DNA of 64,000 nt from Octopus sinensis (taxonomy: Eukaryota), in the NCBI RefSeq assembly GCF_006345805.1, contig NC_043004.1, positions 82,832,001 to 82,896,000 of the forward strand. Reading direction: 5' to 3'. This document shows positions 3,713 to 38,394 of this stretch, piece by piece (position 1 is the stretch's first letter; the number at the start of each line of letters is the position of its first letter). The notes beneath the pieces are model-generated. The model was not told the origin of the DNA and made no database searches. It saw nothing but the letters and a program-made list of their open reading frames with translations. Position numbers and translations under genes: made by a program.

Positions 3713-3713
3713 C

Positions 3714-10320: not shown

Positions 10321-11048
10321 ATGAAATCAGATGAAACACAAATCTTTAAACTGCTGGAATTTTATTGTAAAATAAATATTTGGAGATCGTTTGCGAATAC
10401 AACGCCATTAAAATTTCACAAATTTATCTCAATCTTCTTCTATAGTTTTTACGCTGTGTACTGCTTACATTTGACTGTAGCTCCAATTTTGAACACTATT
10501 AGTGCAATACAAATGGAAAATAGATCAACTGATGAAACCCTTTTTTATATTTACACGATATTTTACCAGATCTTTTTAACAATGTATGGTCTGATGAAAC
10601 TCTTCAAGAAACCGAACGACACACAACTAATTGAAGCATTCACCGAACTTAAAATTAAAGAAGATGATAGAAAATTCTGTAACTCTAATATATTCTTTTC
10701 GTATAAATCACTATGCTTTTTTATATTGTTCCCGTTAACTGCTTTCATGATTCTAGATTATATTTTTACAGAGTCCAATCATGATTTTATGCGTTTCATT
10801 CTATTTCCTGTACCAATCAACAATACTTATCACCTTCTAGTTTTCGCACTATATGTTACGTTTAACTGCATGTCATTCGTTTCCGTGCAACTGACTTTTA
10901 CGTAAATCTAATGATCGGAAGCACACTGGATTATGAGTTTAACAAAGTGACGAGTGATGTTCAACGCTATGTAAAGGAACAGCAATCAGAGAAGTTTATT
11001 TTAGTGGCTGATAGTAAGTGTTCGGTTATTAGTCAAGTGACTATGTAA
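10321..11048 (+). pseudogene. GRL-B: frameshifted and 3'-truncated GR-like paralogue of GRL-D (TM1-TM4 only)
   Basis: ORF 10321-10905 aligns to the GRL-D N-terminus (MKSDETQIFKLLEFY vs MKLKETQFFKLLEFY; HDFMRFILFP vs NDFMRFLTFP). After a 1-nt shift near 10892 the other frame continues DFYVNLMIGSTLDYEFNKVTSDVQRYVKE (GRL-D: DLYVDLVAAFTLSCEFNKLASKFELYVTE). Homology ends ~10985; no TM5-7 or exons 2-4 seen. Confidence 0.8.
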
Positions 11049-14564: not shown

Positions 14565-14672
14565 ATGAATGGAAAAGTAACACAGTTCTGTAAAATCTTA
14601 GAATTTTATCAAAAATGTAATTTTACGAAAGCACATATAAATATTACGGAGATGTACTTGCATAGCAAGTGA
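14565..14672 (+). pseudogene. GRL-C: 35-codon 5' remnant of another GR-like paralogue
   Basis: MNGKVTQFCKILEFYQKCNFTKAHINIT matches the GRL-D start MKLKETQFFKLLEFYQKYDDFSKSCMNIS; not in the ORF track (<60 aa). Confidence 0.75.
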
Positions 14673-15266
14673 CCTGATCTGAGAATGTGTGCTGGAACAA
14701 AAACAATTGCAGCGTGAAAGGTGTTTATAAGCCATTTGAGAAACACACAAAAACTATTAGATTCACTTCAGCATTTAAATTTAATTTGTCAAAATATTTT
14801 CGCCGCTATGAGACCGCGACTTGTTCACTGACAAAATTCCGTGCTACATATAAATATATTCTCGCTGAAAATACGTGATATTAAAAAAAAAACTTGTTTG
14901 CAAACGTTTCATATATTACTCTCTAGATATTTAATTACAAACCCTATTCGCCTATGTATTTGTTTGATGGAATAGGAAAATTTAAGCACCGGTCGTGTAT
15001 TTACATATTTATATATAATTACTTTTAGGTGTTTCATTGCCATGGCTTGTTTTAAATTCTTCAGAAATTCTGGAAACAGTTGATATATTCATATATGCAC
15101 TTATATATATTTTTACTCACCAATGTTGTTTACATCTGAAGAAGAGCGTAGGCTCAAAAAGTTAAAGACTTCTTCACTTCCCGAGCGTTATACTAATACA
15201 TATGTTTGTTGTCTACACCACCTGTCTTCGTCTTCTGTTTCTTTTTGTGAATTCTCTCCCTAAGAT

Positions 15267-15325
<59 letters not shown>

Positions 15326-15364
15326 TGTATGTATTATGTATGTATGTATATATGTATGTATATA

Positions 15365-19678: not shown

Positions 19679-20632
19679 ATGAAACTAAAAGAAACTCAGT
19701 TCTTTAAACTGCTAGAATTTTATCAGAAATATGATGATTTTAGCAAATCGTGTATGAATATTTCATCATTGAAATCACCAAAGTTTAAAACAGTTTGTTT
19801 ACAAGCATTTTATGTTTTGTTATTTATATATGTGATTTTAAACCCCATCCGTATCATGGTTGCTTTAGCTCAATATGAAATCGGTAAAAACTTTCGTATA
19901 TTTACGTATATTTTGATGCTGGTTTACAGAATTATTATTCCTGTTTTTACTTTTTTGAAGCTCTTCGGAAATTCAAAACTCAAACAACTGATTGAAACAA
20001 TGGCCGAAATCAAACTTGAAGATGAGGGTAGAAAATGCTGCAGCATTAACTTCATATATTCATCTGTGATATTTTCGGCACTTATATGCATGATATCCAT
20101 TTGTATTATATTTTTAGATTGCATTTGGCCGTATTTAGATAACGATTTCATGAGGTTCCTAACATTTCCTCTATCTGCGAATAATATATCTAAAGTACCG
20201 CTTGTAGCAATACATGCTGCATTTCATTATTTTCTACTTGTCTTTATGATAATTGATCTGTACGTAGACCTGGTAGCCGCATTTACACTTAGTTGTGAGT
20301 TCAACAAATTAGCGAGCAAATTTGAGCTATACGTAACGGAAAAGCGATACGACCATTCGGAATTCACCGAGAAGCATAAAGATATTACAGAAATATGTAA
20401 CGCTCATGATGTTCTGACCAGGATACTGAAAATTATAAATGAATCTTTACAACTATCATCAGGATTTGTCGTAACTGCTTCCATTTGTGGCAGCTGCATT
20501 GCAACTTACGGAATAATAAATTACTCGTTAAAATTAAGCTTTTATCCGTTTCTATATTTATCAGCGGCGGTACCTAACCATTTTTTCTTTACAGTTTTAA
20601 TATTTTGGTGTGGAATTCGCTTAAATAGATCG
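19679..20632 (+). CDS. GRL-D exon 1 (318 aa, TM1-TM6) of a complete GR-like 7TM ion-channel-type chemoreceptor
   Basis: Six hydrophobic segments; GR-type H..L..(I/L)L...N motif (HDVLTRILKIINESLQ); phase-0 donor TCG|GTGAGT at 20632/20633. Confidence 0.9.
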
Positions 20633-21299
20633 GTGAGTTTGTTTTGCGATATTTCTGAATAATCCAAACTTCATTACATATTTTATGTTTTTGTTGCACA
20701 AGACCGTATGTTGTGACCATGTTACATCATAGACATTGGTGTGGCTAAGCTTTCACTGATTCTGCGTTTGTAGTTGACATTTGGCGGATGAGGAAATACG
20801 AAGTTGATACCACAACTTTATATCGTATGGAATTCTAAATAGTACACGATCTGTTTACTTTATGTTAACATCTACATTCACACTACTTGCGTCACTCATA
20901 AATTTCAGATAAAATATTGACAATCTGTGGGATTCCGAACGCAAAGCCATTACGGTACCTGGTTTTAATTCTAATGTTTGGCGCTATACAAAGGCACTCC
21001 GTTCGGAGATTACTACCGCTTTGTGGTACATGTCATTCCAGGATCAATCACAAGTATATTCTGCATTTCACTATATTGAAGAGAGTCGTAATAATTTTCG
21101 TCATTTCTCAGTATCGGATTTATTCTTCGAGTCAACGTCGGATTGATGCAATAGCATCATAATCGACTGCAAGTTGGCAGGTTCGATTGATACCAGTTAT
21201 ATATAAATGCAGATATGAATAGCATATGGGAACCGGTATTAAGGAAGGATAGGAAAATATTAGATTTATAAGCCCTAAAATTCACTCCATAATTGAACA

Positions 21300-21360
21300 C
21301 GGGCATATGGCGTAGTGGGTAAGAGCGCGGGCTACTAACCCCAAGATACCGAGTTCGAAT
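21300..21360 (+). mobile_element. tRNA-derived SINE head fragment
   Basis: GGCGTAGTGGGTAAGAGCG...ACCGAGTTCGAAT with A/B-box-like motifs; lacks the acceptor stem of a real tRNA. Confidence 0.55.
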
Positions 21361-21471
21361 AATAATAATAATAATAATAATAATGATGACGTTGATGATG
21401 ATGATGATAATAATAATAACAACATCGAAAAATACCTTAGGAATGAGAAACCAGGTTTGAAATTTCCTCAA

Positions 21472-21517
21472 GACACCTGATGAAGGCCGGAGGGTATATC
21501 TGCCGAAACGTTGTGTT
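21472..21517 (+). ncRNA. Minimal type-I hammerhead ribozyme motif (Penelope pLTR type) in GRL-D intron 1
   Basis: GACAC-CTGATGA-A-GGC...GCC-GAAA-CGT-T-GTGTT: stem I GACAC/GTGTT, palindromic ACGT stem III, GUU cleavage triplet. Confidence 0.55.
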
Positions 21518-21749
21518 AACAACAAACAAGATGAGGACAAATATCCGTCAAATTTAACTAATGTACATAATTTCTAATTTCTTAAATATAGAATTGTATA
21601 CTCACTAAGTCTAAATCCCGCTGAGTCATTTTTGACTTTCATCTTTACCGGAATCGATTAAATAAAGTACCAGTTGCATACTGATGTCCTTCGAATCGAT
21701 TAAACACTCTTACCAAAATGTCCGTTAGTGTGACTATGTACTAAACATT

Positions 21750-23330
21750 ATGTTAGTATTTCTGTTTTGCTTGTTGAATTGTTTTTCGATTTTAACCAGT
21801 CCTTGATAGTGTCCGTTAACATATGAATGATTTCTTTGGAGGAAATTGATATCTTCTCAATCAGTACTTCGCTATTTCTAACTAATTGGAATGCTGAAGG
21901 GGTTACCAAAGCCAATCTACACGACAAAATGTAGCTGATTGTGGGGAAGGGACTGGTAAATGATTTATCAGGTGAGAGGAAAAGCAGAATTTGGGCCAAG
22001 GATGGAAACAAACGTAATAAATACTGCTAATGATGTGCCTTGCCACTCCGATGTTAACCAAGAAAAGTCAGTGAGACTGCAGATCGGAATTCGGAGAGGT
22101 AAGTCCACGCCGACCAGTAACGTTGTGGGACGCTGGTCGGAGGAACTGGTTAAATTCCAAGGGCTTTGGTTTGGTCTGGAGCTCCAGATTGAGAAGAAGT
22201 GGGGTGAAGTGAAGGGTAAAAGGATCAATCTCACACAGAAATCGACTGAGAGAAAGCTCTCTCTGAAAGGTCGTACAAAGGTAGAGAATGCTTACATCAC
22301 CTCCGTTATATATGACCCGCAACCATCGTGCATTGTCCCAATTTACGTCTGACCAAACTGGTGCGCGTACTCTTCCCCTTTCTCTGGAAGGGATGAGTTT
22401 AAATTCCCAGGTGCCCCATTTGCTGTCAACACCTAATGTATGGATGGATGGGCATTCCGTAGCTGCTAATGCACAGATATACACTGAGGTTACGATATCT
22501 CCAGTGCTTCCTTCACGATAAGCAAGCGTGGTCTCACTTGACAGGGGATTTTCTATAGTTCGTCTCATTATCCGTGCTGCAGTCCTTCATCAAGCGTAAA
22601 CCGAGGCAGGACATTTAGTATCTAGGTGCTCACAATCATCTGACAGTTGAGCAATGTGGAATTTTGACTCAAGCGTTCTATAGAAGATTAGTGGCGGGTA
22701 AGTGCGACGTTGCTCTCGAGGACACACTGGATATCGATGAGAATGAGCAGAGTGGTCTGTTCTGGAAAACTTATTGGCAGTGGCCTCCTAATCATTTCCA
22801 GAAATATTGGTTTGCCAGTTCTAGCTTTAGCAATCGCGGCTCCAGGTAAACTTTACCACCAACCGGGCTTGCCAGAAATGCGCACAGAACGGCAACAGTC
22901 TTACACGCCCTCATCCAGTGCCCGAGTGTTGCTGACCGGTAATCTTACGTCGAATACTTGCCATCGCGGGTGGAGCGGATCCGACTATCTGTTGTGTCCA
23001 TCGTGCAGTGAAAATAGTTACACTGCCTTCCTTTGGCCGGGAAAGTTAGGTGCTGTTTCTTTGTATTGTGGCCATAGCGAAAGAGGACGAGTGGTGAAAC
23101 AGGTATAAAAGCCTGAAGATACAGAATTTCCTCTTTGGTCAAGCCTCCTATCATCTTGGAAAAGAAATTAAGGGTAGGGAGCGTAATGCTGCTTCCCAGC
23201 TATTTCCTTAAGATGTAGCGCGAATGGCCCGATTTACTCTAAGCATGCGCCACTAGCTTCAGACAGATGAAGATGAGCGGACACTTGCCGGAGCGGGAAG
23301 CGTGATCGTAGCTTGTAGGGTTTCTACAAG
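21750..23330 (+). mobile_element. Decayed L1/Tx1-like LINE fragment (RT C-terminal region)
   Basis: Broken ORFs with GLWFG...W..V..K...W..RKLSLKGR..V.N.YI.SV.Y motif (21960-22352). Confidence 0.6.
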
Positions 23331-23492
23331 CAGCTCTTGGAAATCTCCGTCTTTTAGATACTTTACTTGTTAGAATTTTCATTACTTTTTATTTACACTT
23401 TTCAATTCTACTGCATTGTCCTGTACCGTCCCCAATCTTTTTATATGATCCTTTACTGGTTAATAGTGAAAAGATCATCATTATCATTATTA

Positions 23493-23546
<54 letters not shown>

Positions 23547-23547
<1 letters not shown>

Positions 23548-26500
23548 TTTTTTTTTCCTTCTTTCAAATTTGCTTCCATTTCTTGCCAAGTGTCTTCCCG
23601 ACTCCTAGGGCAAAGCAACTCATAGCATACATTGGTAGGCCATTAAACCAAACTCAGTAGTTCGTTCATTTATTTTTATTTTTTTATTTTTTATTTTTTT
23701 TAAAGTTAACTTAAAATACATGAGCAGCAACAGTTCTCACATCGACAATGCTCTTCTCAATACGTGTGATGTACCAGTTAAGACAATCTTTTGCACTTCT
23801 TGCAGGGATGGTAAGCCAGGGATCATTCTCATATAATTTTCGGTTCCCTTCTTGATCATTCCTAGTGCTCCTACAATCACTGGTTTTGTAACCGCCTTGA
23901 GATGCCACATTTTCTCAATTTCAATGAGTAGGTCTTTATATTTTCTGAGCTTGTCAAACTCTTTCGCTGAGATATTATGATCACAGGGGATGCTCATGTC
24001 GATCAATAAGCAAACTTTATTGTTTTGGTCTTTCACAACAATATCTGGTTTATTGGCCTTGATGGTTCGGTCTGTATGTACTGGAAAGTCCCACAGAATG
24101 GTTACATTTTCTCCTTCAGTTACAGCCTCAGGGTGGTGATTATACCACTTGTCGGCAGTTTTGATATTGTAATGCCGACTTATTAGCCAGTGGAGATATT
24201 GGCTAACTCTGTCATGTCTTAATTTATACTCCACTGGTGCTAAGACTTTACATCCAGAGATTAGGTGGTCCACTGTTTCAATCATGTCATTGCAGAATCG
24301 GCATTTTGGGTCTGCTCCATTTTTCATCACATTGGCCTGGTAGTTCCGGGTTAATAGGCTTTGATCTTGAGCAGCCAGGATGAAACCTTCGCTCTCTGCT
24401 TTTAGCCCTGAGCTCCGTAGCAACTGATGGGTTTGCTTCTGGTCAACATCAGTTTGTTTGCTGCGGGTCACATATTTGCCGTGCAGAGGTTTCTCCTCCC
24501 ACCTATCAGCCAATTGCTCGTGCGCTTTCTTCATTGCCATCATTTTCACCTTCTTTGCAACAATAGTTGCCGTACTTCCCTCGGGTTGTTCAGTTTGGGT
24601 ATCCTTTTGCTTTCCTTTATAATAGAATGAAGCTTCTTTCGTCTCTCGTGATTTTCCACGAGCTTTAGCATCCAGTCATTCGATATTTCGAGATATTTGG
24701 CCAGTCCAATTGTGGTCGTTTTGTAAGCTAGTTCAAATTGGATCAGGCCTCGACCTCCTTGAACTCTGGGAAGGTAAAGACGATCTACGTCTGCCTTTGG
24801 GTGGTGCATCCTATTACAACTCAGCAGCTTGCGTATTTTTCTATCTATATTCTTTACTTCACTCATATTCCAGTTCAACACATTGTAGCTATAAGTAACA
24901 ACTGGAACTGCTAAGGAATTTATAGGTAACACCTTGTTACGTGCATTTAGTTCAGATTTCAGGACTGCACGAAATCTCCTATAACATTCCTTCCTGATTT
25001 TCTCTTTCATGCTTGCATACTGGATACCAGAGCCTTCATTTATCCCTAAATATTTGTATGTTTGTTCTTGCTCAAGCTCTCTTATGACTGTGTCAACATC
25101 TAACACGACTGAATTTGTGGTCTTCACTTTCCCTTTCTGGAAAGTGGCCTTGGCACTCTTCTCAAGTCCAAACTCCATCCCGATGTCATCGCTGAATGCT
25201 TTCACGGTGCGCAATAGGCCTTCAAGTTCATTATTGTCTTTACCATAAAGTTTTAAGTCATCCATATAAAATAGATGGCTTATTTCTTTATTGGCAATTT
25301 TATACCCATACCCTGTTCTGTTTAATTCACTTGTAAGGGGTATTAGTGCTATGCAGAATATTAAAGGTGAAAGTGAGTCACCTTGAAAAATTCCACAGTT
25401 AATGTTTATATTTTCTGAGGCAAGTACTCCATTAGAGTGGTATAATTGGAGATTCGTATTCCACAACGACATATTGTGCTTCAGGAAGTTTGAAATCACA
25501 GGGGAAATTTTGAAGATGTCCAGCGATCTCAAGATCCATGGATGCGGTATACTGTCGAAGGCCTTTTTGTAGTCAATCCATGCGGTGCTGAGATTTCTGC
25601 GCTTGTTGTGACAGTTCTCAAGGATCATACGATTGATTAGCAGTTGATCTTTGCATCCGTAAGATCCTCGGCGGCACCCTTTTTGTTCAATGGGGAAAAT
25701 ATCGTTCTTCTCCATGAATGCATATGTTTTCTCTGCCAGGATAGATGTTAGGATTTTATACGTGGTGGAAAGACAGGTTATAGGCCGATAGTTTTTTGGA
25801 AGGTTGGTTTCGTTATTCTTTGGGAGTAGGTGAGTAATGCCACTTGCTAACCATTCAGGTGTTTTCTTTGGGTCTCTCATAATTCCATTAAGCAGCTGAA
25901 CTAGCTTACCGTGTGCGCATGGGAGCGATGCGAGCCAGAAATTCGGCACCCTATCTTTACCGGGGGATTTCCAATTATGGGCCTTCGTGAGTGCCTTTCT
26001 TAGGTCTGCTATTGTGATGTCTTCCCATGCTTGTTGTTGTAAATTTTGGTAGGATCCTTCAGTTTGTATAATACAGTCTGCATTTATGTTGTACGTCTTC
26101 TTGTCACTCCAAATCCTTTTCCAAAAGTTTTGAACTTCTTCCATGGGAGGGGGTCTTTAACGGTTACTTTCTCCTTCCCTATTTCTCTGTAGAATTTTTT
26201 GGCATTGGATGTGAACAGCTTGGACTTTTTGTTTCAGCGTTTCTTTTATTGATATCAGTTCTTCTCTTGGTGAGGATCCAAATTTTCTCTTCATCTTTCT
26301 TCCTGTTCTGGATCTTACATCATTTCCACATATTAGTTCATTTAATATTGATATTTCCCCTCTCATAAATTCAATCTCTTTCTCAATTTTACTTCTCCAG
26401 GTTTGATTTCTTCCCAGGTTTTATTTTCTTTGTTTTTTCGGGGGCATACAGCTGGTTTCAATTGCCCTAGCAGAAGCGTAAATAATTTCATTTAACTCAG

Positions 26501-27318
26501 TAAAATCAGGTTTTAATTCTCGTATTATTTCATTTGTTACATAGTTGCCAATTTGGATTTGTTTTTTATTTTGGTTTGTATTTGAGAGTTTATGAAGTGG
26601 TTCTCTATCATTCATACTTGTATGTCTTACAACTTCAAGCGTATTCAGGATTTTCTGCCTCATTTCTGCCATAGACTCTCTGTGTTCTTCAGCAAATGCG
26701 AGATCTTCAGTTACTGTTGTTTTTTTTCGTTTTCCTGGCTATCTTTAACAGGTACAATAGAATTTCTTGTATCTTCAGGCCTTTGCGTACTTTGGTCAGA
26801 TGGCAGTCTTTCAATTAAGCCTCGTGGCGGGCTATACTATTCATCTGATTCTTCATTTCCTTTGTGTCTTATATTTATGTCATTTTCCGTTGCGTGCTTC
26901 ATCGCGCTTATTTCACTGTCTGTGAGTCTGTTATTTCTAAGGATATCCCTCCTCACATTTGCTAATTTGTTCTCGTCCAAATAGGGCCTACTGTCTTGAT
27001 TCCGTGTTCTCCATATACTGTAAGAGTTTGCGGTGTGTCTCTCTTGAGATGGCCTACCTAATGCATAGTAATAAGCGTATATTACTTCTTTATACTCTTC
27101 TCGGTTCCATTTGTTCCGCTTACATTTTTCTTTCTGTGGTGGTTGTGGTGGTGAACTTGGAGGGCTCGAGTTGGGGGATTTCCCGTTCAAGTGACCATCC
27201 ATGTCCGTATTCGGAGAAGAGTTTGTGCCAGTTGATGACTTTTCGATCCCAGGCTGGCTCTTCCCTGGGGGACGCGCTTCCAGATTAACCATAGGGCAAG
27301 CGATTTGGTATTCTGATT
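23547..27318 (-). mobile_element. Near-full-length Dong/R4-type non-LTR retrotransposon (RT + CCHC zinc knuckle + restriction-like endonuclease), with a few frameshifts
   Basis: RT ORF 24546-26144 (DYKKAFDS, QGDSLSP, YMDD); ORF 23737-24549 (CRFC..ETVDHLISGC, KPDIVVKD...LLIDMSIP); N-terminal ORF 26837-27292. Flanked by (TAA)n at the 3' end and (TAA)n(GAA)n at the 5' end. Confidence 0.9.
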
Positions 27319-27388
27319 TCTTCTTCTTCTTCTTCTTCTTCTTCTTCTTCTTCTTCTTCTTCTTCTTCTTCTTTTCTTCTTCTTCTTC

Positions 27389-27435
<47 letters not shown>

Positions 27436-27438
<3 letters not shown>

Positions 27439-27716
27439 TAGTTTTATTTTTATAGCGTGCTTTCATTTCACTACCGAGCGCAGCTCTGTGTGCCTTGGGT
27501 ATGTGCTGTGATTTGTTGTGATGCTCTGATGGTTATTGTATGGAAAGTGTTCTGCGTAGGATGTGTGCAGTGCCTAGTAGTGCAATTTTCTGTATGTTAT
27601 ATGTGTTTGTAAGTCCTGGTGTTTTTGTTATGTATTTGTCTGAATTTTTTTTATCATGCCTAATGCACCTACTATGATAGGAATTGTTTCTGTTTTAGGA
27701 ATTGTTTCTGTTGAAG
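27436..27716 (-). mobile_element. 5'-truncated 3' end of a related RLE retrotransposon
   Basis: Minus strand encodes TIPIIVGALGMIKK...IQKIALLGTAHILRRTLS, paralleling the end of ORF 23737-24549; (ATT)n on both sides. Confidence 0.75.
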
Positions 27717-27747
<31 letters not shown>

Positions 27748-27748
<1 letters not shown>

Positions 27749-27980
27749 TTTTTTTTTTCTTCTTTCAAATTTTCTTCCATTTCTTCCCGAGTGTCTTCCC
27801 GACTCCTAGGGCAAAGAAACTCATAGTGTATATTGGTAGGCCATTAAACCAAACTCAGTAGTTCGTTCATTTTTTTTTTTTTTTTTAAGTTAAATTAAAA
27901 TGCATGAGCAGCAACAGTTCTCACATCGACAATGATCTTCTCAATACGTGTGATGTACCAGTTAAGACAATCTTTTGCAC

Positions 27981-27981
<1 letters not shown>
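27748..27981 (-). mobile_element. 5'-truncated copy (3' UTR plus last codons) of the 23547-27318 element
   Basis: Closely similar to 23547-23800; embedded in (ATT)n. Confidence 0.85.
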
Positions 27982-28011
<30 letters not shown>

Positions 28012-28043
28012 CATTATTATTATTATTATTATTATTATCATCA

Positions 28044-28108
<65 letters not shown>

Positions 28109-28661
28109 GAGTGAGCGAGCAGAGCATGCCATCAAAGTGACACTGGGGTAAAATATACGAAGCCTAGTATACCCATCATGACTACCCGTCTGATAAGGGT
28201 ACACCAGGCACATGCATCACAACCATATGTGTGCGACATGGTGATCTCATATCAAGATAAACAGCACATGACATTGCAGGTGGAGCCCAGTTAGAATTTT
28301 CTTCAGATCGAGTAACCCATCGCGCTCAAAAGGTCCTTGAATAAGGGTTGTTAAGGACGTTGAACGAAACACCAATGTTTCCAGAGGTGAATTATTCAAA
28401 CCCCAAAGATTCCTTCTCAACACATGGCTATGATGCTCCCCCACTACTTCTGCTCGTGATCAGAGATGCACATATCGTTAGCCACTAAGGGACATGCTCA
28501 ACTAGTTAAGGTCAAACAACTGACAAGCAAATCTGTGGTATTGAGCAGAGTATTTGCTGTAGCCCATCTTTTATACCAAGACAAAACAATGTACATGATA
28601 ACGCTTCCAATCAGTTAAGATCAGAAGCTATGAGAGCCACTGCCTGGTACTGCATCAGGGC

Positions 28662-28665
<4 letters not shown>
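28109..28665 (-). mobile_element. ~0.55-kb non-autonomous repeat with (TAA)n tail, same family as 12550-13045
   Basis: Reverse-complement match to 12550-13045; bounded by (ATT)n. Confidence 0.65.
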
Positions 28666-28694
<29 letters not shown>

Positions 28695-28739
28695 CCTTAT
28701 TATCATTATTAGTATTGCTGTTGTTGTTATAGTCTTTTT

Positions 28740-29750
28740 TTTCAGAGCGCTCAGTTTGCTCTGGTTGATCCTGTTAGAGCCGAGAGCAGATTACTGTTAA
28801 ATGTCTTACATGATCTCTTTCTGCACATTATAAGCTTTGATAATTGTGGAAGACATTCAACACTCAAATATCAATCGCAAAATCCTATCTATTCTCAACA
28901 GAGCAGACATTTGGGCTTACTCTGCTTTCATGCCAATTCAGATTTGTCTAACATTTTTCGAACCTGGTTGTTACTGTTCCGAGTGCGCCTACAACAACTG
29001 GGGTGACAGACGCTCTCCTCATAGCCGACATTCCGGCAATTTCGTCTTTTAGCAGTCTGTACTTAGCAATATTTTCTAGGTCTTTGTCACTTACGCGTGC
29101 ATCTTCAGTATCTATTATCATGGTTTCCTTTCTTTCCTTATCTACCTCAACAATGTCTGGTCTCCTACCATCGATATTGAGTCATATTTAATTGTAAAAT
29201 GCCGCAGTATCTTATATTTATTCTTCTCAGTGACTCCTTTTGATTCGTGTTCGCATAATTTCCGTACTCTGCTCAGGCTGCCCTTTTCACGTAGTTTCCA
29301 ATGAACTAAATTTTCCACGCTATCGCGCTTATTTTTGCAGTGCTTCCTATCCGGCTTGCTACATTCACTCACTATATGTGAGATTGTTTCGTTTTTGTTG
29401 TCAAAGGGGTGATTGTTATGCATTTGGAACTTGGTGTAATTAGTTCTCAGAGCTTGTTCCTGGACCTTACATATCAATGCCGATTACTTTCTCGTAGTCA
29501 CCACCAAGTCTTGTCTTTTATTTCGATTTCTCTGAGGTATTGACCATGCATGCTTATTCATTCTTCTTCATGTTGCTTTTAAATGTTTGTGGGTGCGTCA
29601 CATTTTTGGTAGATCTTGTATTGCTAATTCTAAAATCGGCGAGCAAAGAGTCACTATACTGTTTGCTGTACCATTCCAGACTGTTCGTTGACTACACAGA
29701 TATGGCATACTATGAGGCACCTTCCACCCAGCCTATCAGTATCGCTTTTG
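28740..29750 (-). mobile_element. Decayed RLE-type LINE 3' fragment
   Basis: ORF 29142-29477 (ETISHIVSECSK...VHWKL) and VVVGALG motif resemble the CCHC/RLE region. Confidence 0.6.
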
Positions 29751-30137
29751 AGCTGTAGTCTTTTGTCAATTGCCATCACCATTCTAGCTTTCCTGTCCAT
29801 TTTCTCGTGCTCATTTTGACCACTTAACAATATAATGAATTAAGGAAATATCCCATGGGTTTATTATCATTATCTTGTTTTGGCCGCTGAGATTATTTTC
29901 CATAATAAATTTGCTTCTTCTACGATATTATTATTATTATTATTATTGCGCTATTTCGCACGTTGCACCGTTCTATGTCCATATTCCGCGCAGGTTGACT
30001 TTGCCTTTCATCCCTTCTGGGGTTGATAAAATAAATACAAGTTGAACACTGTGGTCGATGTAAACGAATAATTCGAAATTATTATTATTATTATTGTTCT
30101 TCTTATTATTATCATTATTATTATTATTATTATATTA

Positions 30138-30175
<38 letters not shown>

Positions 30176-30191
30176 TATTATTATTATTATT

Positions 30192-30540
30192 AGTGTCGTT
30201 GTTGTTATGTGATGAAAACTCATAGCATATTCTGTTGGGTATGATGTAAAGTGTCAGCTATCCACAGCCATCAGATTAAGGTTGCATTTAGTTACTGTTC
30301 ATGTTTCAAAAATCGTGTGAAGAATTCTTACAGTTCCAAGCAATGCTGATTTTTGTAGGTGTTCCACCTTCACACTTGTACCAATCACTTTGGTAGTTGC
30401 GTGCTGATACTTCTAATTGTACCAATTGCTAGTGGTATTGATATTACTCTCTTCATTGACCACCGGTCCTCTGTATCTGTCTGGGCGTTCACATCTCTTA
30501 CAAACTGAGCGTACATTTTTCTCCTAGCACGCTGCTTTTT
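30192..30540 (-). mobile_element. Short decayed RLE-type LINE 3' fragment
   Basis: Minus strand reads ...VISIPLAIGTI... and LQKSALLGTVRIL; sits in (ATT)n/(GTT)n tracts. Confidence 0.5.
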
Positions 30541-30633
30541 AAAAATTATTATTATCATGATTATTATTGTCATTGTTGTTGTTGTTATTGTTATTGTAAT
30601 TGCTGTTGTTGTTGTTGTTGTTTTTGTTGTTGA

Positions 30634-30664
<31 letters not shown>

Positions 30665-30732
30665 CTTCTTCTTCTTCTTCTTCTTCTTCTTCTCCTCCTC
30701 ATTATTATTATTATTTTCTCTTTCATATGAAG

Positions 30733-30801
30733 GTACACAGCATTACGGAAAGTATTAATTTCATGCAATTCCAGGGCATAAAGCAGGAAGCCGTTTCGAA
30801 G
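30733..30801 (+). CDS. GRL-D exon 2 (23 aa, VHSITESINFMQFQGIKQEAVSK)
   Basis: ttttctctttcatatgaAG|GTA ... AAG|GTAAAG; 69 bp, phase 0/0; same length as GRL-F exon 2 (shared EA[VI]xK end). Confidence 0.85.
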
Positions 30802-30890
30802 GTAAAGAATGTTTAATATGCGGTCATCTTACATTAAGTTTTCATAAAATTTTTCTTTTTTTAATATATTTTCCCTATATATATATATAG

Positions 30891-30957
<67 letters not shown>

Positions 30958-31013
30958 ATATATATATATATATATATTATATATACATATATGTATAAAT
31001 TAATTAATAATAA

Positions 31014-31640
31014 AATATTAGGAATAAATCCAAACTTACGGGGAAAAATCAGATTTAGGATTGAATCCAATTTTATAGTAAAATATTATAGTATATTAAA
31101 TTAGAGATAAAACCACTATTAGGCAAATCATACAATGAAAAACTTAAGCCACTACATAAGATTATTTAATTTATATTATTTAAATATATAACAAAATTAT
31201 TAAAAATGATAATATTAATTATCTTTTTTAATAATTTTGTTATATATTTAAATAATATAAATTAAATAATCTTATGTATTGGCTTAAGTTTTTCATTATA
31301 TGATTTGCCAGTAGTGGTTTTAACTCTAATTTAATATAATATATATATATATATATATATAATATATATAAATAATATTAGGGAGTAAATCCAAACTTAC
31401 AGGGAAAAATAAGATTTAGGATTAAATCTAATTTTATAGTATAAATATATATATATATTATATTAAATTAGAGATAAAACCACTATTAGGCAAATCAAAC
31501 AGTGAAAATCATGAACCAATACATAGAAATAAAATTAATTAATAAAAATATATAAAATTCAAAATTTAAAATATTTAAATTAAAGTTAAAATTTTAAAAA
31601 ATATTCAAATTAATAATTTATACTTGTAAATTTTTAAATA
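31014..31640. repeat. AT-rich unit present as an inverted pair (~31090-31340) and a direct duplicate (~31373-31500); related sequence inverted at ~53350-53520
   Basis: Shared block attaaattagagataaaaccactattaggcaaatca seen in both orientations. Confidence 0.65.
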
Positions 31641-32330
31641 TATATGTATATATATATTATTATTATCATTATTGTTATTATTTAAAAAAAAAATATAACT
31701 ATCAAAGAGTATTAAAAGTTTAAAATAAGATAAAGAGTAAAACCACTACGAACGTTTCATGTCCATTAACCAATTCCAATAACAATAATTTAAATTCAAT
31801 TAATAAGTCGAATTAAGGTTATAGTCAATCTTCAGGTTAATTATAATATTTAAATGAATAATCAGAAATATTTAAACAATATTTTTTAAGAAAAAATAAA
31901 ATAATATTTTTTCTTATAAAAAACTCTATTATCAAACTAGAAACTTAACGATTATGATTATGTCATACAATCGATTATAATGTTAAATATTAATTTTGAA
32001 TTTTTATGTACTTTTTAAGTATTTAAGGTAAGAAACCCACAAATAATCTAATATCAGTTATAGTCAATATCTAATTACATAAATATTTTACAAAAATTGA
32101 CTATTCATATTATTAAATATATAATATTTGAATAATAAATAAATTATCAATGAAAATATATAAATGTATATAAATATTAGAATTAAGATCTGAAATTATC
32201 TCTATAAATAAATATATATGCACGTATAATAAAGACCTAATAAATTAATTATTCATTATTACTAATAAAAATATTAAAATATTAAAGATGAAATAGTTAA
32301 TTACAAAAAAACAAACAAACAATCTTAAAT

Positions 32331-32365
<35 letters not shown>

Positions 32366-32769
32366 CTATGATGATGCTGCTGCTGCTGATGATGATGATG
32401 ATTATGATGATGATGATATATTGTATCAAGAAGTTTTCGTGGGTTATTGTGCAGAAGGTCGCAGAATTTGCTTGCTGCAAATGCCGTCCCCAACAATTTT
32501 CTATGCAATTCTTATCTATGCGTCTAATCTTGGCCGAAGTTTACTCCACCAAGATGTAATTCTTTATTGAAATTATTCTTTGAGCATAGTTCAAAACTTT
32601 CCGATTTGTAGGAATATTTATGAGAGGTCAAGCAAATCAGGAACAGTTTCCCCAGGCACTACCTGGGAAAACATAACAAACATATCTCAGTCTGATGTAT
32701 GAAAAGGTTTTTAAACGTTTCTTGTTGTACAATCTCCGCTCATGTTATCTCTCTTCTTGTGTATTACAG

Positions 32770-32859
32770 ATATTTGTTCTCCTAAATCGTCTAATGACTG
32801 AAAGTCATGAAATTGATGTTGGTGGTTGTTTTGTAATAACTCCCTCGTCAACGCTTACG
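32770..32859 (+). CDS. GRL-D exon 3 (30 aa, IFVLLNRLMTESHEIDVGGCFVITPSSTLT)
   Basis: ctcttcttgtgtattacAG|ATA ... ACG|GTAAAT; 90 bp, phase 0/0; GR-type L.RL...I..GG.F.I pre-TM7 motif. Confidence 0.9.
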
Positions 32860-33199
32860 GTAAATGTCACAGCGATTAATAATTACTGCATTTGATTCTA
32901 TAAAAAGTGCTATATATATATATCACGTGATCACGTGACCGACCTGACCATCATATGTTGTTACACATCGCTGGTCACAATGCGTTCGCATTGTTTTTAG
33001 CCTTCGAATGACGCCACCCCACTGGCTAAGCGAGCAGGCCAACAGAAGAAAGAGTGGTGAAAGAGTACAGCAGGGATCACCCCCCCCCTCTGCCGAAGCA
33101 TCGTGGAGCTTTTAGGTGTTTTCGCTTAATAAACACTCACAACGCCTGGTCTGGGAATCGAAACCGAGATCCTACGTCCGCGAGTCCACTGCCCTATAT

Positions 33200-33372
33200 A
33201 GGTGCAGGAGAGCATGTGAAGTAAGTAGCTCGCTTACCCAACCACATGGTTCCGGGTTCAGTCCCACTGCATGGCATCTTGGGCAAGTGTCTTCTACTAT
33301 AGCCTCGGGCCGACCAAAGCCTTGTGAGTGGATTAGGTAGACGGAAACTGAAAGAAGCCCGTCATATATATG

Positions 33373-33411
<39 letters not shown>

Positions 33412-33625
33412 ATGTGTGTGTGTGTGTGTCTGTGTCTATCCCCCCAACATCGCTTGACAACCGATGCTGGTGTGTTTACGTCCCCGTAACTTAGCTGTTC
33501 GGCAAAAGACAGCGATAGAATAAGTACTAGGCTTACAAAGAATAAGTAATGCGTTCGATAAGCTCGACGAAAGGTGGTGCTGCAGTCAAATGACTGGAAC
33601 AAGTAAAAAAGTAAAAGAGTAAAAG
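33200..33625 (+). mobile_element. tRNA-derived SINE (family abundant in this window)
   Basis: Head ...ggttccgggttcagtcccactgc..., internal (TA)(TG) tract, 3' end agtaaaagagtaaaaga; other copies at 47050-47505 (-), 54650-54980 (-) and in the 36-41 kb array. Confidence 0.7.
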
Positions 33626-34927
33626 AATGAATAAATATATATATATATATATATCGATAGAAATGGTAAGACAACAAAGGAATAAAAGAGACCTCGACAT
33701 GATGTAAATAGAGGAATTTATCTATAAATGTAGTATGTGACAATTATTCGGTAAGCATGATAAAAATCCGAGTTTCGGATGTCGGAGTGGAAATCCACGC
33801 CGCTATCTCTTCAGTTCTCTGGCCATCGGAAAAAATACTATGAAAAATGACCGTTAAACAAAGAAAAATTACTGCTAAGGGGAGCGAGTAAAAGTCAGGG
33901 GGTAAATATGTTCATATTATTCACGTAAGCGGACATGTCCATACCTACACATGCGCACCCGCATATCCACACACATGCGCCTATAAGCATACACATTTTC
34001 ACCCACATCATTCTCCCCCAAAAAATATATATATACAATCTCACACACGCGCACAAGAAGGTTCATATACACGTCTATATACGCACAAGCACAAGAAAAG
34101 ACAGGTCTAAGGGCAACAATACAGAAAAAAGTGTAAATAATTATAAAAAGATGATTAAGAGTAAAAACGGCTATATATGCACATACCCGTATGGACGCAT
34201 ACAGACACGTCTATATACGCGCATATACGCACACGTCTATATGCGCGCATATACGCACACGTCTATATGCACGCACACACACACATGCACAAATATATAT
34301 ATATATATATATATATTATCATCATCATCATCATCGTTTAACGTCCGCTTTCCATGATAGCATGGGTTAGACGGTTTGACTGGGGTCTGGGAAGCCAGGA
34401 GGCTGCACCAGGTCCAGTCTGATCTGGCAGTGTTTCTACAACTGGATGCCCTTCCTAACGCCAACCACTCCGTGAGTGTAGTGGATGCTTTGTACGTGCC
34501 ACCGGCACAGGTGCCAGGCGAGGCTGGCAACGGCTACGATCGGTTGGTGCTTTTTACGTGCCACCGGCATGGAGGCCAGTCGAGGCGGCGCTGGCAACTG
34601 CCACGTTCCGATGGTTCTTTTACGTGCCACCTGTACTGGTATCACAACTACAATTTCCATTGATTTTTGATCTATTTCGATTTCACTTGCCTCAACAGGT
34701 CTTCGCAAGCAGAGTGTTGTGTCCCAAGAATGAAAGGTATGCATAAGTGGACTGGCTACATTCCAGGTAGAGGCCACGCGTTATGGTATCATATATATAT
34801 ATATATCATGCCTTTAAGTTGTTAAATATTTAATAAGCCACCCATATTATAAATAGTTTCTATGTAATAATTTTATTAATTCTCTGAAAATAACAATTCC
34901 TTCTTTTCTCTCTTTTCGACTTTTCAG

Positions 34928-34987
34928 ATGATGGGAAGTTTTATTACTTACATAATGGTGGTGATTCAAACAAAGGATTTAGAATAG
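34928..34987 (+). CDS. GRL-D exon 4 (TM7b, MMGSFITYIMVVIQTKDLE*); spliced protein 390 aa
   Basis: Long polypyrimidine tract + cAG|ATG; TY-x5-Q signature; stop TAG 34985-34987; AATAAA at 35358-35363. Confidence 0.92.
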   Translation: MMGSFITYIMVVIQTKDLE

Positions 34988-36213
34988 TATCTCTTCTTTA
35001 TTAAAGTAAATTCAATATGATATCGGATCTAACTGCATTAAATTACCATTAAATGCATTCAGACCAATCCCTGCTGCACAAAGTACATCAAGATCAAATT
35101 TTTCTTTGAGCGTAAAGATGGACTTGACACTGCAGCGTGTTCCGGATCACCCTACCGTTAAAAATCTGTTTTTCTTCTATCCTCTTTCCTATCAATTGCT
35201 GATTGATTTTTGCTTGACTAACTTACAACTGTCTGCTATCTTTTAACTGATATCTTACCATAAATAATATTTTGTCAAACCTTTTTTTTTTCATCTATTC
35301 TATTTTTCTTATTCTCTCGTCTGCACACTTTGTTTGTCACTTACTCACATTTCCATAAATAAATAACATAATATATTACTAAAAGTGTTAAACCTTAGAT
35401 TTTTTCATTATTGTAATATATTTTCTAAACATTAAATATCACTATGAATCCAGTTGCGTTAAAAATTTCTTTAACTGAAAAATATGCATGAGCATCACAA
35501 TGGAGAATGCTATCTGAAAGGAAGGAAAGATATCCATAATACATGCGCCACATGACACAGTGATATTTCGATCAATTTCATGTGTGTTTGATCAGAAAAA
35601 TCTCTTCCACTACGGCCAGACCGATGAATGTTAAAAGAACATGATCATTTCGTCATAATAATCAGTACGGAAACTTTATTTAGTTCGATGCGAACAGTTA
35701 TGTGCTAAACGGATGAATATAAGTGGGAGGATGGAGTTAAAGAATAAATATGAGACATAAGGACCTAAAATGTAAACAAAATAAACTAGTGACAGGTTGA
35801 TATTGTTCAGGGGACGGCAAAAATTTATATGCCCCTTTGTAAATGTATTTTCTCTTGCAGCAAATGAAGATAAATAAAGAAAGAATATATATGTGAAGTA
35901 TCGAAGAGGAGGCTGGAAATCGATGCACCGTACTAATCTTTCGGTTCGGTACACATTGTCATCTCAGCATTTGATTGTGCATAAATTTGCATTGAGTGTT
36001 TTTGGTGAAAAGTTGCATAGTTGCTAGGAAGTTCGCGTCGTAAATGCGTGGATTGTAGTCCAGTTAGATAGTGTGGTTCCCCGGGTAAATATTCCTTATA
36101 TAGCTGTGAACTGACGAAAGCTGGGAAGCTCGGGTTGTATATATATATATATAGGCGCAGGAGTGGATCCGTAAGAGGAAGCTTGCTTCCAAACCAACTG
36201 ACAGAAGACGTCG

Positions 36214-36278
<65 letters not shown>

Positions 36279-36309
36279 AATAATATATATTTGTGTGTGT
36301 TGTGTGTTG

Positions 36310-36773
36310 TGTATAAATATGTACATATACATACATATATATAGTCGAACAAATCGACCCCAGGATTTATTTTTTGTAAGCTTAATTCTTATTCTATCGG
36401 TTCTTTAGCCGAACCGCCAGTTTACGGGGACGAAAACAAACCAGCATCGGTTGTCAAACGAAGGTGGGGCGACAAGCACAGATACACAGAGATACACACA
36501 TACGCTGACACACACACACAAACACACACCACACACACACACACACACAAACACGCACATATATATAAAGTTAAATTAAATATAGGTATACCATTGAATT
36601 GGATGTTTGACAGAAACCTTTGAAGGATTTCTTTTCCTCAGATTGTTATTATATATATATATATATATATTTATATATTATATACAATATATGTGTGTGT
36701 GTATGTTTATTTATATATATGCATATATACACATGTATAAATATATGTATATATATATAAATATATATATATG

Positions 36774-36818
<45 letters not shown>

Positions 36819-37173
36819 GAATATACTCTTTTACTTGTTCAGTCATTGACTGCGGCCATGCTGGAGCACCGCCTTTAGTCGAGAAAATCGACTCCCAGGA
36901 CTTATTCTTTGTAAGCCTAGTACTTATTTTATCGGTCTCTTTTGTCGAACCGCTAAGTTACGGTGACGTAAACACACCAACATCGGTTGTCATCGATGTT
37001 GGGGGGACAAACTCAAACACACAAACACACACATATATACGACGGGCTTTTCCAGTTTCCGTCTACCAAATCCACTCACAAGGCTTTGTTCGGCCCGAGG
37101 CTATAGTAGAAGACACTTGCCAAGGTGTTATGTATATGTATATGTATATATGTATATGTATATTATATGTATA

Positions 37174-37213
<40 letters not shown>

Positions 37214-37361
37214 ATATATATATTATATATATGCATGTATGGGCTTCTTTCAGTTTCCGTCTACCAAATCCACTCACAAGGCTTTGTTCGGCCCGTGGCT
37301 ATAGTAGAAGACACTTGCCCAAGGTGTCATGTATATGTATATGTATATATGTATATGTATA

Positions 37362-37394
<33 letters not shown>

Positions 37395-37732
37395 ATAATA
37401 TATATATATATATATATTATGCATATATGGGCTTCTTTCAGTTTCCGTCTACCAAATCCACTCACAAGGCTTTGTTCGGCCCGAGGCTATAGTAGAAGAC
37501 ACTTGCCCAAGGTGTCATGTATATGTATATGTATATATGTATATGTATATGATATGTATATATATAGATATAATATATATATATATATATGCATATATGG
37601 GCTTCTTTCAGTTTCCGTCTACCAAATCCACTCACAAGGCTTTGTTCGGCCCGAGGCTATAGTAGAAAACACTTGCCCAATGTGCCATGTATATGTATAT
37701 GTATATATATATATGTATATGTATATGTTATA

Positions 37733-37803
<71 letters not shown>

Positions 37804-37813
37804 ATGTAGATAT

Positions 37814-37865
<52 letters not shown>

Positions 37866-38254
37866 TGTGGTGTGTGTGTGTGTGTGTGTGTGTGTGTGGT
37901 ATAAATATGTACATATACATACATATATATAGTCGAACAAATCGACCCCAGGATTTATTTTTTGTAAGCTTAATTCTTATTCTATCGGTTCTTTAGCCGA
38001 ACCGCCAGATTACGGGGACGAAAACAAACCACCATCGGTTGTCAAACGAAGGTGGGGCGACAAGCACAGATACACAGAGATACACACATACGCTGACACA
38101 CACACACAAACACACACCACACGCACACACACTAACACACACACACACGCACATATATATAAAGTTAAATTAAATATAGGTATACCATTGAATTGGATGT
38201 TTGACAGAACCCTTTGAAGGATTCTTTTCCTCAGATTGTTATTATATATATATA

Positions 38255-38299
<45 letters not shown>

Positions 38300-38394
38300 A
38301 ATATGTGTGTGTTGTATGTTTATATATATATATATATATATGCATATATACACATGTATAATATATATATATATATATAATATATATATATATG

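What the first reader, a model, noticed from the sequence alone, without database searches (positions are those of the whole stretch)
19679..34987. Complete 4-exon, 390-aa GRL-D gene reconstructed across 15 kb
Exons 19679-20632, 30733-30801, 32770-32859 and 34928-34987 join in frame with canonical GT-AG phase-0 junctions (318+23+30+19 aa). The product has seven hydrophobic segments and ends in MMGSFITYIMVVIQTKDLE, a typical GR length. The ORF track shows only exon 1 with read-through, so the pore-forming C-terminus would be missed.
Basis: partly seen in the sequence, partly recalled or inferred. Interest (0 to 1): 0.85.

Follow-up and report, generated by a model that had tools for sequence, protein, structure and literature searches.

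The report
Octopus gustatory-receptor-like gene, four exons
The four exons join as claimed into an intact 390-residue octopus relative of insect taste and smell receptor channels, a sound but fairly ordinary annotation of a gene missing from the public protein collections searched.

Summary
Exons 19679-20632, 30733-30801, 32770-32859 and 34928-34987 join in phase 0 through GT..AG introns into a 390-aa ORF.

The interpretation also holds. NCBI models from Octopus sinensis and O. bimaculoides (389-390 aa, about 47% identical) have the same 318+23+30+18/19 layout. A paralogous cluster in O. sinensis and a neighbouring minus-strand gene in the window put their 3' exons at the same positions.

Membership of the GR/GRL family rests on four results:
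- The octopus-only profile reaches proteins that all pass Pfam 7tm_7.
- A wider profile hits Drosophila Gr64a at E=4e-10.
- The TM7 motif is present as TYIMVVIQT.
- The charge distribution favours an intracellular N-terminus, and the fold search returns only insect GR/OR/Orco structures, not GPCRs.

- Exons 2-4 are "constant" exons of a cluster built like Drosophila Gr28b/Gr39a. Here, two upstream first exons (10321, 14565) are decayed.
- An in-frame acceptor at 30775 would give a 376-aa form, as in NCBI X2 isoforms.
- The 10-kb intron 1 holds an antisense retrotransposon.

No transcript evidence was available for this gene. It is a new member of a known kind, of modest interest.

The parts
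19679..20632 (+). Exon 1, the variable exon: 318 aa from the start codon to donor TCG|gtgagt. It encodes the cytoplasmic N-terminus and TM1-TM6.
   Evidence: It aligns from Met1 with P0001/P0048. The exon-1 HMM scores 488 bits. Hydrophobic segments lie at 46-64, 78-96, 131-149, 176-204, 262-280 and 291-309.
20633..30732 (+). Intron 1, 10.1 kb. It is enlarged by an antisense non-LTR retrotransposon, and a (GTT)n(CTT)n(ATT)n tract lies just before the acceptor.
   Evidence: RVT_1 ORF at 24546-26144(-), E=1e-29, with adjoining ORFs 23737-24549(-) and 26837-27292(-). The equivalent intron in O. sinensis L001 is 3.4 kb. No exon-1-like or 3'-exon-like sequence lies inside.
30733..30801 (+). Exon 2, constant exon 1: 23 aa, VHSITESINFMQFQGIKQEAVSK. 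It starts the intracellular TM6-TM7 linker.
   Evidence: It is 75% nt identical to L001 46673-46741 with the same boundaries. The first 14 aa align with a conserved (A/I)H...L block in distant GRLs.
30775..30801 (+). Alternative short exon 2 (9 aa, GIKQEAVSK), using the in-frame internal acceptor ttccag|G. It would give a 376-aa product.
   Evidence: Read from the sequence. NCBI isoform pairs differ by exactly this 14-aa segment: P0008 vs P0005, P0048 vs P0002 and P0051 vs P0003.
32770..32859 (+). Exon 3, constant exon 2: 30 aa, IFVLLNRLMTESHEIDVGGCFVITPSSTLT. By homology it covers the TM7a/anchor region.
   Evidence: It is 88% nt identical to L001 47649-47738, with 6 synonymous and 4 nonsynonymous codon changes. 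tblastn E=4e-11.
34928..34987 (+). Exon 4, constant exon 3: 19 aa plus TAG, MMGSFITYIMVVIQTKDLE. It encodes TM7b with the family motif.
   Evidence: G374, T378, Y379 and Q385 are invariant across 14 GRLs. It is one of only three G...TY.....Q exons in the window.
10321..11009 (+). Decayed upstream variable exon. It is homologous to exon-1 positions 1-231, has a frameshift near 10785-10890, and lacks TM5-TM6 and the donor.
   Evidence: It is orthologous to L001 59371 onward.
14565..15356 (+). Second decayed upstream variable exon. Fragments match exon-1 positions 1-29 and 26-105, with a weak match to 288-309. Stops and frame changes are present.

Best explanation
GRL-D is an intact protein-coding gene of an Octopus genome. 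It encodes a 390-aa member of the gustatory-receptor-like (GR/GRL, '7TMIC') superfamily.

Exon 1 carries its own start codon and, by inference, its own promoter. It encodes the cytoplasmic N-terminus and TM1-TM6, the part that forms the ligand pocket in solved insect GRs and ORs. Three short phase-0 exons lie 10-15 kb downstream. They encode the intracellular TM6-TM7 linker, TM7a, and TM7b with the TYxxxxxQ motif. In Orco and the GRs this region makes the tetramer's anchor domain and lines the pore.

The three short exons are the 'constant' part of a variable/constant cluster of the type known from Drosophila Gr28b and Gr39a. In the paralogous O. sinensis cluster, at least five intact first exons share one such 3' set. 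In this window only the proximal first exon (19679) is intact, and two upstream ones have decayed, so the locus now yields effectively one receptor.

What is shown: the exon anatomy, the homology and the family membership. What is inferred: transcription, use of the 30733 acceptor rather than 30775, tetrameric cation-channel function, and a chemosensory role.
For: Exon anatomy:
- Junctions and frame are confirmed.
- Full-length collinear alignment with P0001 (389 aa; 47% identity, 100% coverage) and with the X1 isoforms P0048 (390 aa) and P0051 (389 aa).
- L001 has first-exon copies at 1457, 6109 (partial), 10001, 16398, 27567 and 42321. One 3' exon set follows at 46673-46741, 47649-47738 and 49533-49586.
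- NCBI isoforms P0001, P0009 and P0010 join different first exons to an identical C-terminus.
- The constant exons are 83% nt identical between window and L001, with 14 synonymous and 14 nonsynonymous codon changes. dN/dS is 0.23, against 0.57 for exon 1.
- The window's minus-strand neighbour has the same 23+30+17 aa exon layout.

Family membership:
- The octopus-only profile A1 found 40 relatives among 1.84e9 representatives. All 10 distant ones tested pass the Pfam 7tm_7 gathering score.
- Profile A3 hits Gr64a at E=4e-10, Gr43a at 6e-6, MhOR5 at 3e-5 and Orco at 4e-3, aligned through TM7.
- The TM7 motif residues are invariant.
- K+R count is 26 against 5, favouring N-in.
- Foldseek's top 11 hits are all insect GR/OR/Orco (TM-score 0.46-0.55), while GPCRs reach only 0.16-0.19.

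The GR hallmarks of three 3' phase-0 introns and TYhhhhhQF are as stated in PMC9998090. The Gr39a architecture is as described in PMC2204066.
Against: - No transcript data exist for this gene. Its 390-, 376- and 327-aa forms are absent from the 15-billion-protein collection.
- GRL-D alone gives no Pfam hit even at E<=10, so membership is transitive, through profiles.
- The AF2 model is poor: pLDDT 53.5, with residues 324-390 below 50. Foldseek E-values are only about 0.01.
- The exon-2 acceptor is AAG, a less common form, and a CAG|G acceptor lies 42 nt downstream.
- The last motif residue is T, not F.
- No ortholog above 52% identity was found, so conservation of this particular exon 1 between species is untested.
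Confidence: 0.85

Rival explanations
1. The main product is the 376-aa form. Exon 1 splices to the internal acceptor at 30775 (ttccag|GGC), which skips the 14 residues VHSITESINFMQFQ.
For: The acceptor at 30733 is AAG, whereas the one at 30775 is CAG|G. NCBI models the same 14-aa skip in paralogs: P0002, P0003 and P0005 against P0048, P0051 and P0008.
Against: The 14 aa are conserved with O. sinensis (10 of 14 identical). They align with a conserved (A/I)H...L block present in all distant GRLs. The long forms are the X1 isoforms in both species. A long pyrimidine-rich tract precedes 30733.
Confidence: 0.2
2. GRL-D exon 1 is a silent or dying relic like its two upstream neighbours. It is either not transcribed or yields only the 327-aa read-through product lacking TM7, so no functional receptor is made from this cluster.
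For: Two of three first exons in the cluster are already decayed. No annotated ortholog was found. Intron 1 has been enlarged by a retrotransposon insertion. Exon 1 has a fairly high dN/dS of 0.57.
Against: All 390 codons are open, including the 318-codon exon 1 (p about 4e-11 by chance). All six splice dinucleotides are intact. The constant exons are under constraint, with dN/dS 0.23. A dN/dS near 0.55 is also seen between intact, annotated O. sinensis first exons.
Confidence: 0.12
3. The protein is a GPCR-like seven-helix receptor with an extracellular N-terminus, not a GR-type channel.
For: It has seven hydrophobic segments, and GRL-D on its own has no direct Pfam hit.
Against: Profile hits go to Gr64a, Gr43a, MhOR5 and Orco and to no GPCR below E=5. 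Relatives pass 7tm_7. Foldseek gives GPCRs TM-scores of 0.16-0.19, against 0.46-0.55 for GR/OR. The K+R bias of 26 to 5 favours N-in.
Confidence: 0.02

Closest known systems
Octopus sinensis LOC118764608 isoform X1 (P0001, 389 aa). Also the X1 isoforms of O. bimaculoides LOC106880719 (XP_052825891.1, P0048, 390 aa) and O. sinensis LOC118764607 (XP_036361417.1, P0051, 389 aa). NCBI names all of them 'uncharacterized protein'.
   Same: Same length and the same exon layout, with one long first exon and 23+30+18/19 aa exons. The constant-exon peptides are nearly the same and the TM7 motif is identical. The window's first 10.5 kb is collinear with the 3' end of the LOC118764608 locus at about 90-96% nt identity.
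   Different: Exon 1 is only 38-52% identical. The constant exons differ at 14 of 71 aligned codons (57 of 71 identical). GRL-D is therefore a separate, tandemly duplicated cluster, not an ortholog of any protein in the collection.
Drosophila Gr39a, Gr28b and Gr23a loci, which have alternative long 5' exons spliced to shared short 3' exons (Gr39a as described in PMC2204066; Gr28b and Gr23a from general knowledge).
   Same: Several large tandem first exons, each encoding most of the receptor, lie upstream of three small conserved exons that encode the C-terminus with TM7. Exon gain, loss and pseudogenisation occur within the array.
   Different: The host is a mollusc, not an insect. It was not tested whether the architecture is inherited or convergent. 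In this window only one variable exon is still intact. No transcript proof is available here.
Solved insect 7TMIC channels: DmGr64a (8jme), BmGr9 (8vc2), Gr43a (8zdz), MhOR5 (7lic) and Orco (6c70).
   Same: Profile-level sequence homology through TM7. They are the best and only coherent fold matches. The seven-helix, N-in layout is shared.
   Different: Structural alignments show 11-16% identity. The motif ends QT rather than QF. The model is of low confidence. Channel activity, ligands and oligomeric state are untested.
GRLs of other non-arthropod animals, including Mollusca, Annelida, Echinodermata and Cnidaria (Robertson 2015, Saina 2015 and Eyun 2017, as cited in PMC7746228).
   Same: The same superfamily, defined by the TM7 motif and conserved 3' introns.
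   Different: In the paper library searched, no paper describing octopus or cephalopod GRLs, or their clustered first-exon organisation, was found. That is the absence of a hit, not proof of novelty.

Membership tests
GR/GRL superfamily (Pfam 7tm_7 PF08395; 7TMIC) | Significant sequence similarity to the family profile | tested here: met
   The direct test fails: GRL-D alone has no Pfam hit at E<=10. The transitive test is met. Paralogs hit 7tm_7 with a best E-value of 3.4e-7 (2 of the 6 A1 members; P0002 and P0005 carry precomputed PF08395 hits). All 10 distant hits of the octopus-only profile pass the gathering score. Profile A3 hits Gr64a at E=4e-10, and also Gr43a, MhOR5 and Orco.
GR/GRL superfamily | TM7 motif TYhhhhhQF at the C-terminus (as given in PMC9998090) | tested here: met
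   The motif reads TYIMVVIQT, so T, Y and Q are present with five hydrophobic residues between, and the final F is replaced by T, as in all the octopus paralogs aligned. G374, T378, Y379 and Q385 are invariant in the 14-sequence alignment.
GR/GRL superfamily | [quoted passage not shown] | tested here: met
   The gene has exactly three introns. All are phase 0, all fall in the last 72 codons, and the last lies immediately before MMGSFITY. Positional homology with annotated insect introns was not tested.
GR/GRL superfamily | Seven TM helices with an intracellular N-terminus and an extracellular C-terminus | tested here: met
   A Kyte-Doolittle scan gives seven segments. K+R is 26 in the loops assigned to the inside and 5 in those assigned to the outside. 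These are heuristics only, with no dedicated predictor or experiment.
GR/GRL superfamily | Fold like solved GR/OR/Orco subunits | tested here: inconclusive
   The top 11 Foldseek PDB hits are all GR/OR/Orco, with TM-score 0.46-0.55 and probability about 1.0, and the next hits fall below 0.2. However, the best E-value is only 0.011, and the model is poor (pLDDT 53.5, C-terminus below 50).
GR/GRL superfamily | Forms a tetrameric ligand-gated cation channel | not testable with these tools
   This needs expression, electrophysiology or cryo-EM.
Alternative-first-exon GR locus (Gr28b/Gr39a type) | Tandem long 5' exons, each with its own ATG and donor, upstream of one shared set of short 3' exons | tested here: met
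   In O. sinensis L001 there are five intact first exons and one partial one, followed by one 3' set. The window has one intact and two decayed first exons (10321, 14565) and a single 3' set, with no other plus-strand 3' exons between 1683 and 30733.
Alternative-first-exon GR locus (Gr28b/Gr39a type) | Transcripts that join different 5' exons to the same 3' exons | not testable with these tools
   Only model-level support exists. The NCBI isoforms P0001, P0009 and P0010 of LOC118764608 have different N-terminal parts and identical constant regions. No RNA data were accessible, and in the window only one isoform could be productive.
Rhodopsin-like GPCR | GPCR fold and extracellular N-terminus | tested here: not met
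   GPCR structures give TM-scores of 0.16-0.19. The only GPCR sequence hit has E=5. The charge bias points the opposite way.

The most novel reading that the evidence does not exclude
Octopus GRL genes are organised as tandemly duplicated variable/constant clusters. Promoter choice among many TM1-6 exons, joined to one shared pore/anchor module, would generate receptor diversity. This would be a second, so far undescribed, ionotropic chemoreceptor repertoire in octopus beside the nicotinic-derived chemotactile receptors. Its architecture would either go back to the protostome ancestor or have arisen convergently with Drosophila Gr28b/Gr39a. The window would capture one such cluster decaying to a single isoform that current annotations miss.
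Probability: 0.35. Interest if true: 0.55.

Novelty: new member of a known kind. Interest (0 to 1): 0.35.

Why it matters
For annotation: ORF-based or short-range gene callers see only exon 1 with a false 9-codon read-through tail. They lose the 72 residues that carry the family-defining TM7. This gene is absent from a 15-billion-protein collection, although its paralogs are present.

For biology: octopus chemosensation has been explained mainly by nicotinic-receptor-derived chemotactile receptors. A clustered GRL family with shared pore exons is an additional candidate receptor set. It also allows a comparison with insect Gr28b/Gr39a on how chemoreceptor diversity is generated.

None of this is very surprising to a specialist. 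GRLs are known in molluscs, and NCBI already models the neighbouring paralogs.

Tried and rejected
- A direct Pfam scan of GRL-D and of three other window ORFs gave no hit for GRL-D. There were only sub-threshold 7tm_7/7tm_6 hits for the minus-strand exon at 63513-63947, and a spurious sub-threshold SDF hit for 44740-43616.
- The thin octopus-only profile A1 against PDB sequences gave only a chance ferritin match at E=0.41. The wider profile A3 was needed.
- Two word-indexed homolog searches returned only 10 octopus proteins, so no deep alignment could be built. As a result the AF2 model is poor.
- The locus of LOC118764607 could not be fetched through P0003, because only the longest isoform is on record.
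- I looked for a conserved promoter element upstream of ten variable exons. Only a short AT-rich stretch just before the ATG is shared, and nothing was convincing.
- I looked for 3' exons for the divergent minus-strand ORF at 44740-43616 and found none.
- I considered that an upstream extension of exon 3 might replace exon 2, as suggested by tblastn overhangs. I rejected this because the overhang residues do not match.
- Species identity was not resolved. The window is about 92% identical to O. sinensis over collinear non-coding DNA. It is 68/70 aa identical to an O. bimaculoides constant region.
Full report
**1. Observation**

The four segments exist as described. They translate without stops to 318, 23, 30 and 19 residues followed by TAG. 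Joined, they give a 1173-nt, 390-codon ORF. All exon lengths are multiples of three, so the three junctions are phase 0.

The donors are gtgagt, gtaaag and gtaaat. The acceptors are ...catatgaag|G...gtattacag|A and ...cttttcag|A. The mechanical ORF list shows only 19679-20662, which is exon 1 plus nine read-through codons.

An open frame of 318 codons has a chance probability of about 4e-11 at this window's 33.7% G+C.

**2. Independent support for the exon model**

A search of 5.8 billion protein clusters returned only octopus proteins. The best is O. sinensis LOC118764608 isoform X1 (P0001, 389 aa, 47% identity, 100% coverage).

Its C-terminus is ...GIRLNRS VHSITQSIHYMQFQGVDQEVVAK ILVFLNRLTTESHGIDVGGCFVITPSSTLT MIGSFITYILVVIQTKPL. 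The X1 isoforms of two further genes have the same layout: P0048 from O. bimaculoides (390 aa) and P0051 from O. sinensis (389 aa).

I fetched the P0001 locus as L001. There the three small exons lie at 46673-46741, 47649-47738 and 49533-49586, with the same boundaries and phases.

Against the window they are 75%, 88% and 83% identical at the nucleotide level. Codon changes are 14 synonymous and 14 nonsynonymous. dN/dS is 0.23 for the constant exons and 0.57 for exon 1 (only 71 codons, so this is rough).

tblastn and an exon-1 HMM find no competing plus-strand exons between 1683 and 30733.

A neighbouring gene on the minus strand has the same 23+30+17 aa 3' exons, at 59552-59484, 57957-57868 and 54379-54326. 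Their spliced product is 68/70 identical to O. bimaculoides LOC106880487 (P0047/P0026).

The exon structure is therefore a family trait and not an accident of this locus.

**3.

In L001, first-exon copies lie at 1457, 6109 (partial), 10001, 16398, 27567 and 42321. All are on the same strand, and a single set of 3' exons follows them. The NCBI isoforms X1, X2 and X3 of that gene (P0001, P0009, P0010) have different first-exon sequence and an identical constant region.

This is the architecture described for Drosophila Gr39a, with four or five large alternative exons spliced to three small conserved exons (PMC2204066). From general knowledge, Gr28b and Gr23a are built the same way.

The window's plus strand shows the same layout in a decayed state:
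- A first-exon copy at 10321-11009 carries a frameshift and stops matching after about residue 231.
- Fragments of another copy lie at 14565-15356, with stops.
- The intact exon follows at 19679.
- One constant set follows that.

The whole window contains only three TM7-type exons, at 1630-1686(+), 34928-34987(+) and 54379-54326(-).

Window positions 1-10538 are collinear with L001 47947-59588 at about 90-96% identity. GRL-D is therefore the next tandem cluster downstream of the LOC118764608 ortholog, in an Octopus species close to but distinct from O. sinensis.

Its exon 1 is most like the last variable exon of the upstream cluster (L001 42321; 52% aa and 74% nt identity, with similarity extending about 150 bp upstream of the ATG). 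This points to duplication of whole clusters.

**4. Alternative acceptor**

Inside exon 2 there is an in-frame ttccag|GGC acceptor at 30775. Using it removes VHSITESINFMQFQ and gives 376 aa.

NCBI models exactly this 14-aa difference in three isoform pairs: P0008/P0005, P0048/P0002 and P0051/P0003.

I favour the long form as the canonical one for three reasons:
- The 14 residues are conserved between clusters.
- They align with an (A/I)H...L block present in all distant GRLs.
- They are present in the X1 isoforms.

The AAG acceptor at 30733 is a weaker form, though a long pyrimidine-rich microsatellite precedes it. Only RNA data can settle the ratio.

**5. Family membership**

GRL-D alone has no Pfam hit. 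Two of the six sequences in alignment A1 hit 7tm_7.

The octopus-only profile was scored against 1.84 billion representatives. It found just 40 proteins at E<=1e-3. All ten of the distant ones I scanned pass the 7tm_7 gathering score, and several also match Trehalose_recp and 7tm_6.

A profile that includes those relatives hits DmGr64a (E=4e-10), Gr43a (6e-6), MhOR5 (3e-5) and Orco (4e-3). The alignment runs through ...GTIVTYELVLLQF.

In the 14-sequence alignment, G374, T378, Y379 and Q385 are invariant. This is the family's TYhhhhhQF motif (PMC9998090), here ending in T. [quoted passage not shown]

A hydropathy scan gives seven segments. Lys+Arg counts are 26 against 5 in favour of a cytoplasmic N-terminus.

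The AlphaFold2 model from a 12-sequence alignment is poor: pLDDT 53.5, pTM 0.48, and the C-terminus below 50. Even so, its 11 best PDB matches are all insect GR/OR/Orco subunits (TM-score 0.46-0.55). The next matches are ABC transporters and GPCRs at or below 0.19. The Foldseek E-values are only about 0.01, so I count the fold test as suggestive only.

**6. Mechanism**

The following is inferred from homology with solved GR/OR channels, which is general knowledge of the family. Four subunits assemble. TM7b, encoded by exon 4, lines the pore. TM7a and the preceding linker, encoded by exons 2-3, form the cytoplasmic anchor domain. TM1-6, encoded by exon 1, form the ligand pocket.

The variable/constant split thus places ligand specificity in the duplicating exon, and keeps the assembly and pore module shared and more constrained. 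The dN/dS contrast fits this.

**7. Novelty and score**

GRLs in molluscs are known (PMC7746228). Close octopus paralogs are already modelled by NCBI, though they are unnamed.

This particular gene is absent from the collection in its 390-, 376- and 327-aa forms. No protein more than 52% identical to it was found. I found no paper on octopus GRLs in the library.

It is a new member of a known kind. The clustered architecture in a mollusc is the most interesting aspect. Interest: 0.35.

Noticed in passing
window 1630-1686 (+), and window 1-10538 as a whole: The last (TM7) exon of an upstream GRL cluster encodes MIGSFITYILLVIQTKQL*. Its flanks are nearly identical to constant exon 4 of O. sinensis LOC118764608. 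The first 10.5 kb of the window is collinear with L001 47947-59588 at about 90-96% identity.
   Followed up: yes
window 64000-63525, 59552-59484, 57957-57868, 54379-54326 (-): A second GRL gene lies on the minus strand. Its exon 1 runs off the window end, and it has the same 23+30+17 aa phase-0 3' exons. The constant region is 68/70 identical to O. bimaculoides LOC106880487 (P0047/P0026), whose annotated first exon is a different one. This locus too probably has several first exons.
   Followed up: partly
window 44740-43616 (-): A divergent 374-aa exon-1-like ORF with read-through after ...ITLYSK|gt. It matches the exon-1 HMM at E=2e-5 and is 25% identical to P0022. No TM7 exon or other constant exon was detectable downstream on its strand. 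It is either an orphan first exon or its 3' exons have been lost in the repeat arrays.
   Followed up: partly
window 23737-27292 (-): An antisense non-LTR retrotransposon sits inside intron 1 of GRL-D. It has an RVT_1 ORF of 532 aa (E=1e-29), a weak sub-threshold zf-RVT match (E=5e-4) in the adjoining 23737-24549(-) ORF, and an upstream ORF. It accounts for much of the difference between the 10.1-kb intron here and the 3.4-kb intron in the O. sinensis paralog cluster.
   Followed up: partly
window about 36000-43600: A dense array of TA-rich microsatellites is interleaved with repeated copies of a SINE-like unit, translating as ...[21 protein letters not shown].... It generates many spurious long ORFs. 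The same repeats occur many times in L001.
   Followed up: no
window 61993-62589 (+), 7022-7417 (+), 56534-57076 (+): Further ORFs that look like retroelement fragments or are of unknown origin. None has a Pfam hit at E<=1e-3.
   Followed up: no
L001 1457-43274 (O. sinensis CM016866.1): Five intact first exons and one partial one sit in tandem. NCBI isoforms were recovered for three of them (X1-X3: P0001, P0009, P0010). I did not map P0009 and P0010 to individual first exons, so which of the other copies, such as 1457 and 27567, are covered by protein models is unknown, and the array may be under-annotated.
   Followed up: no
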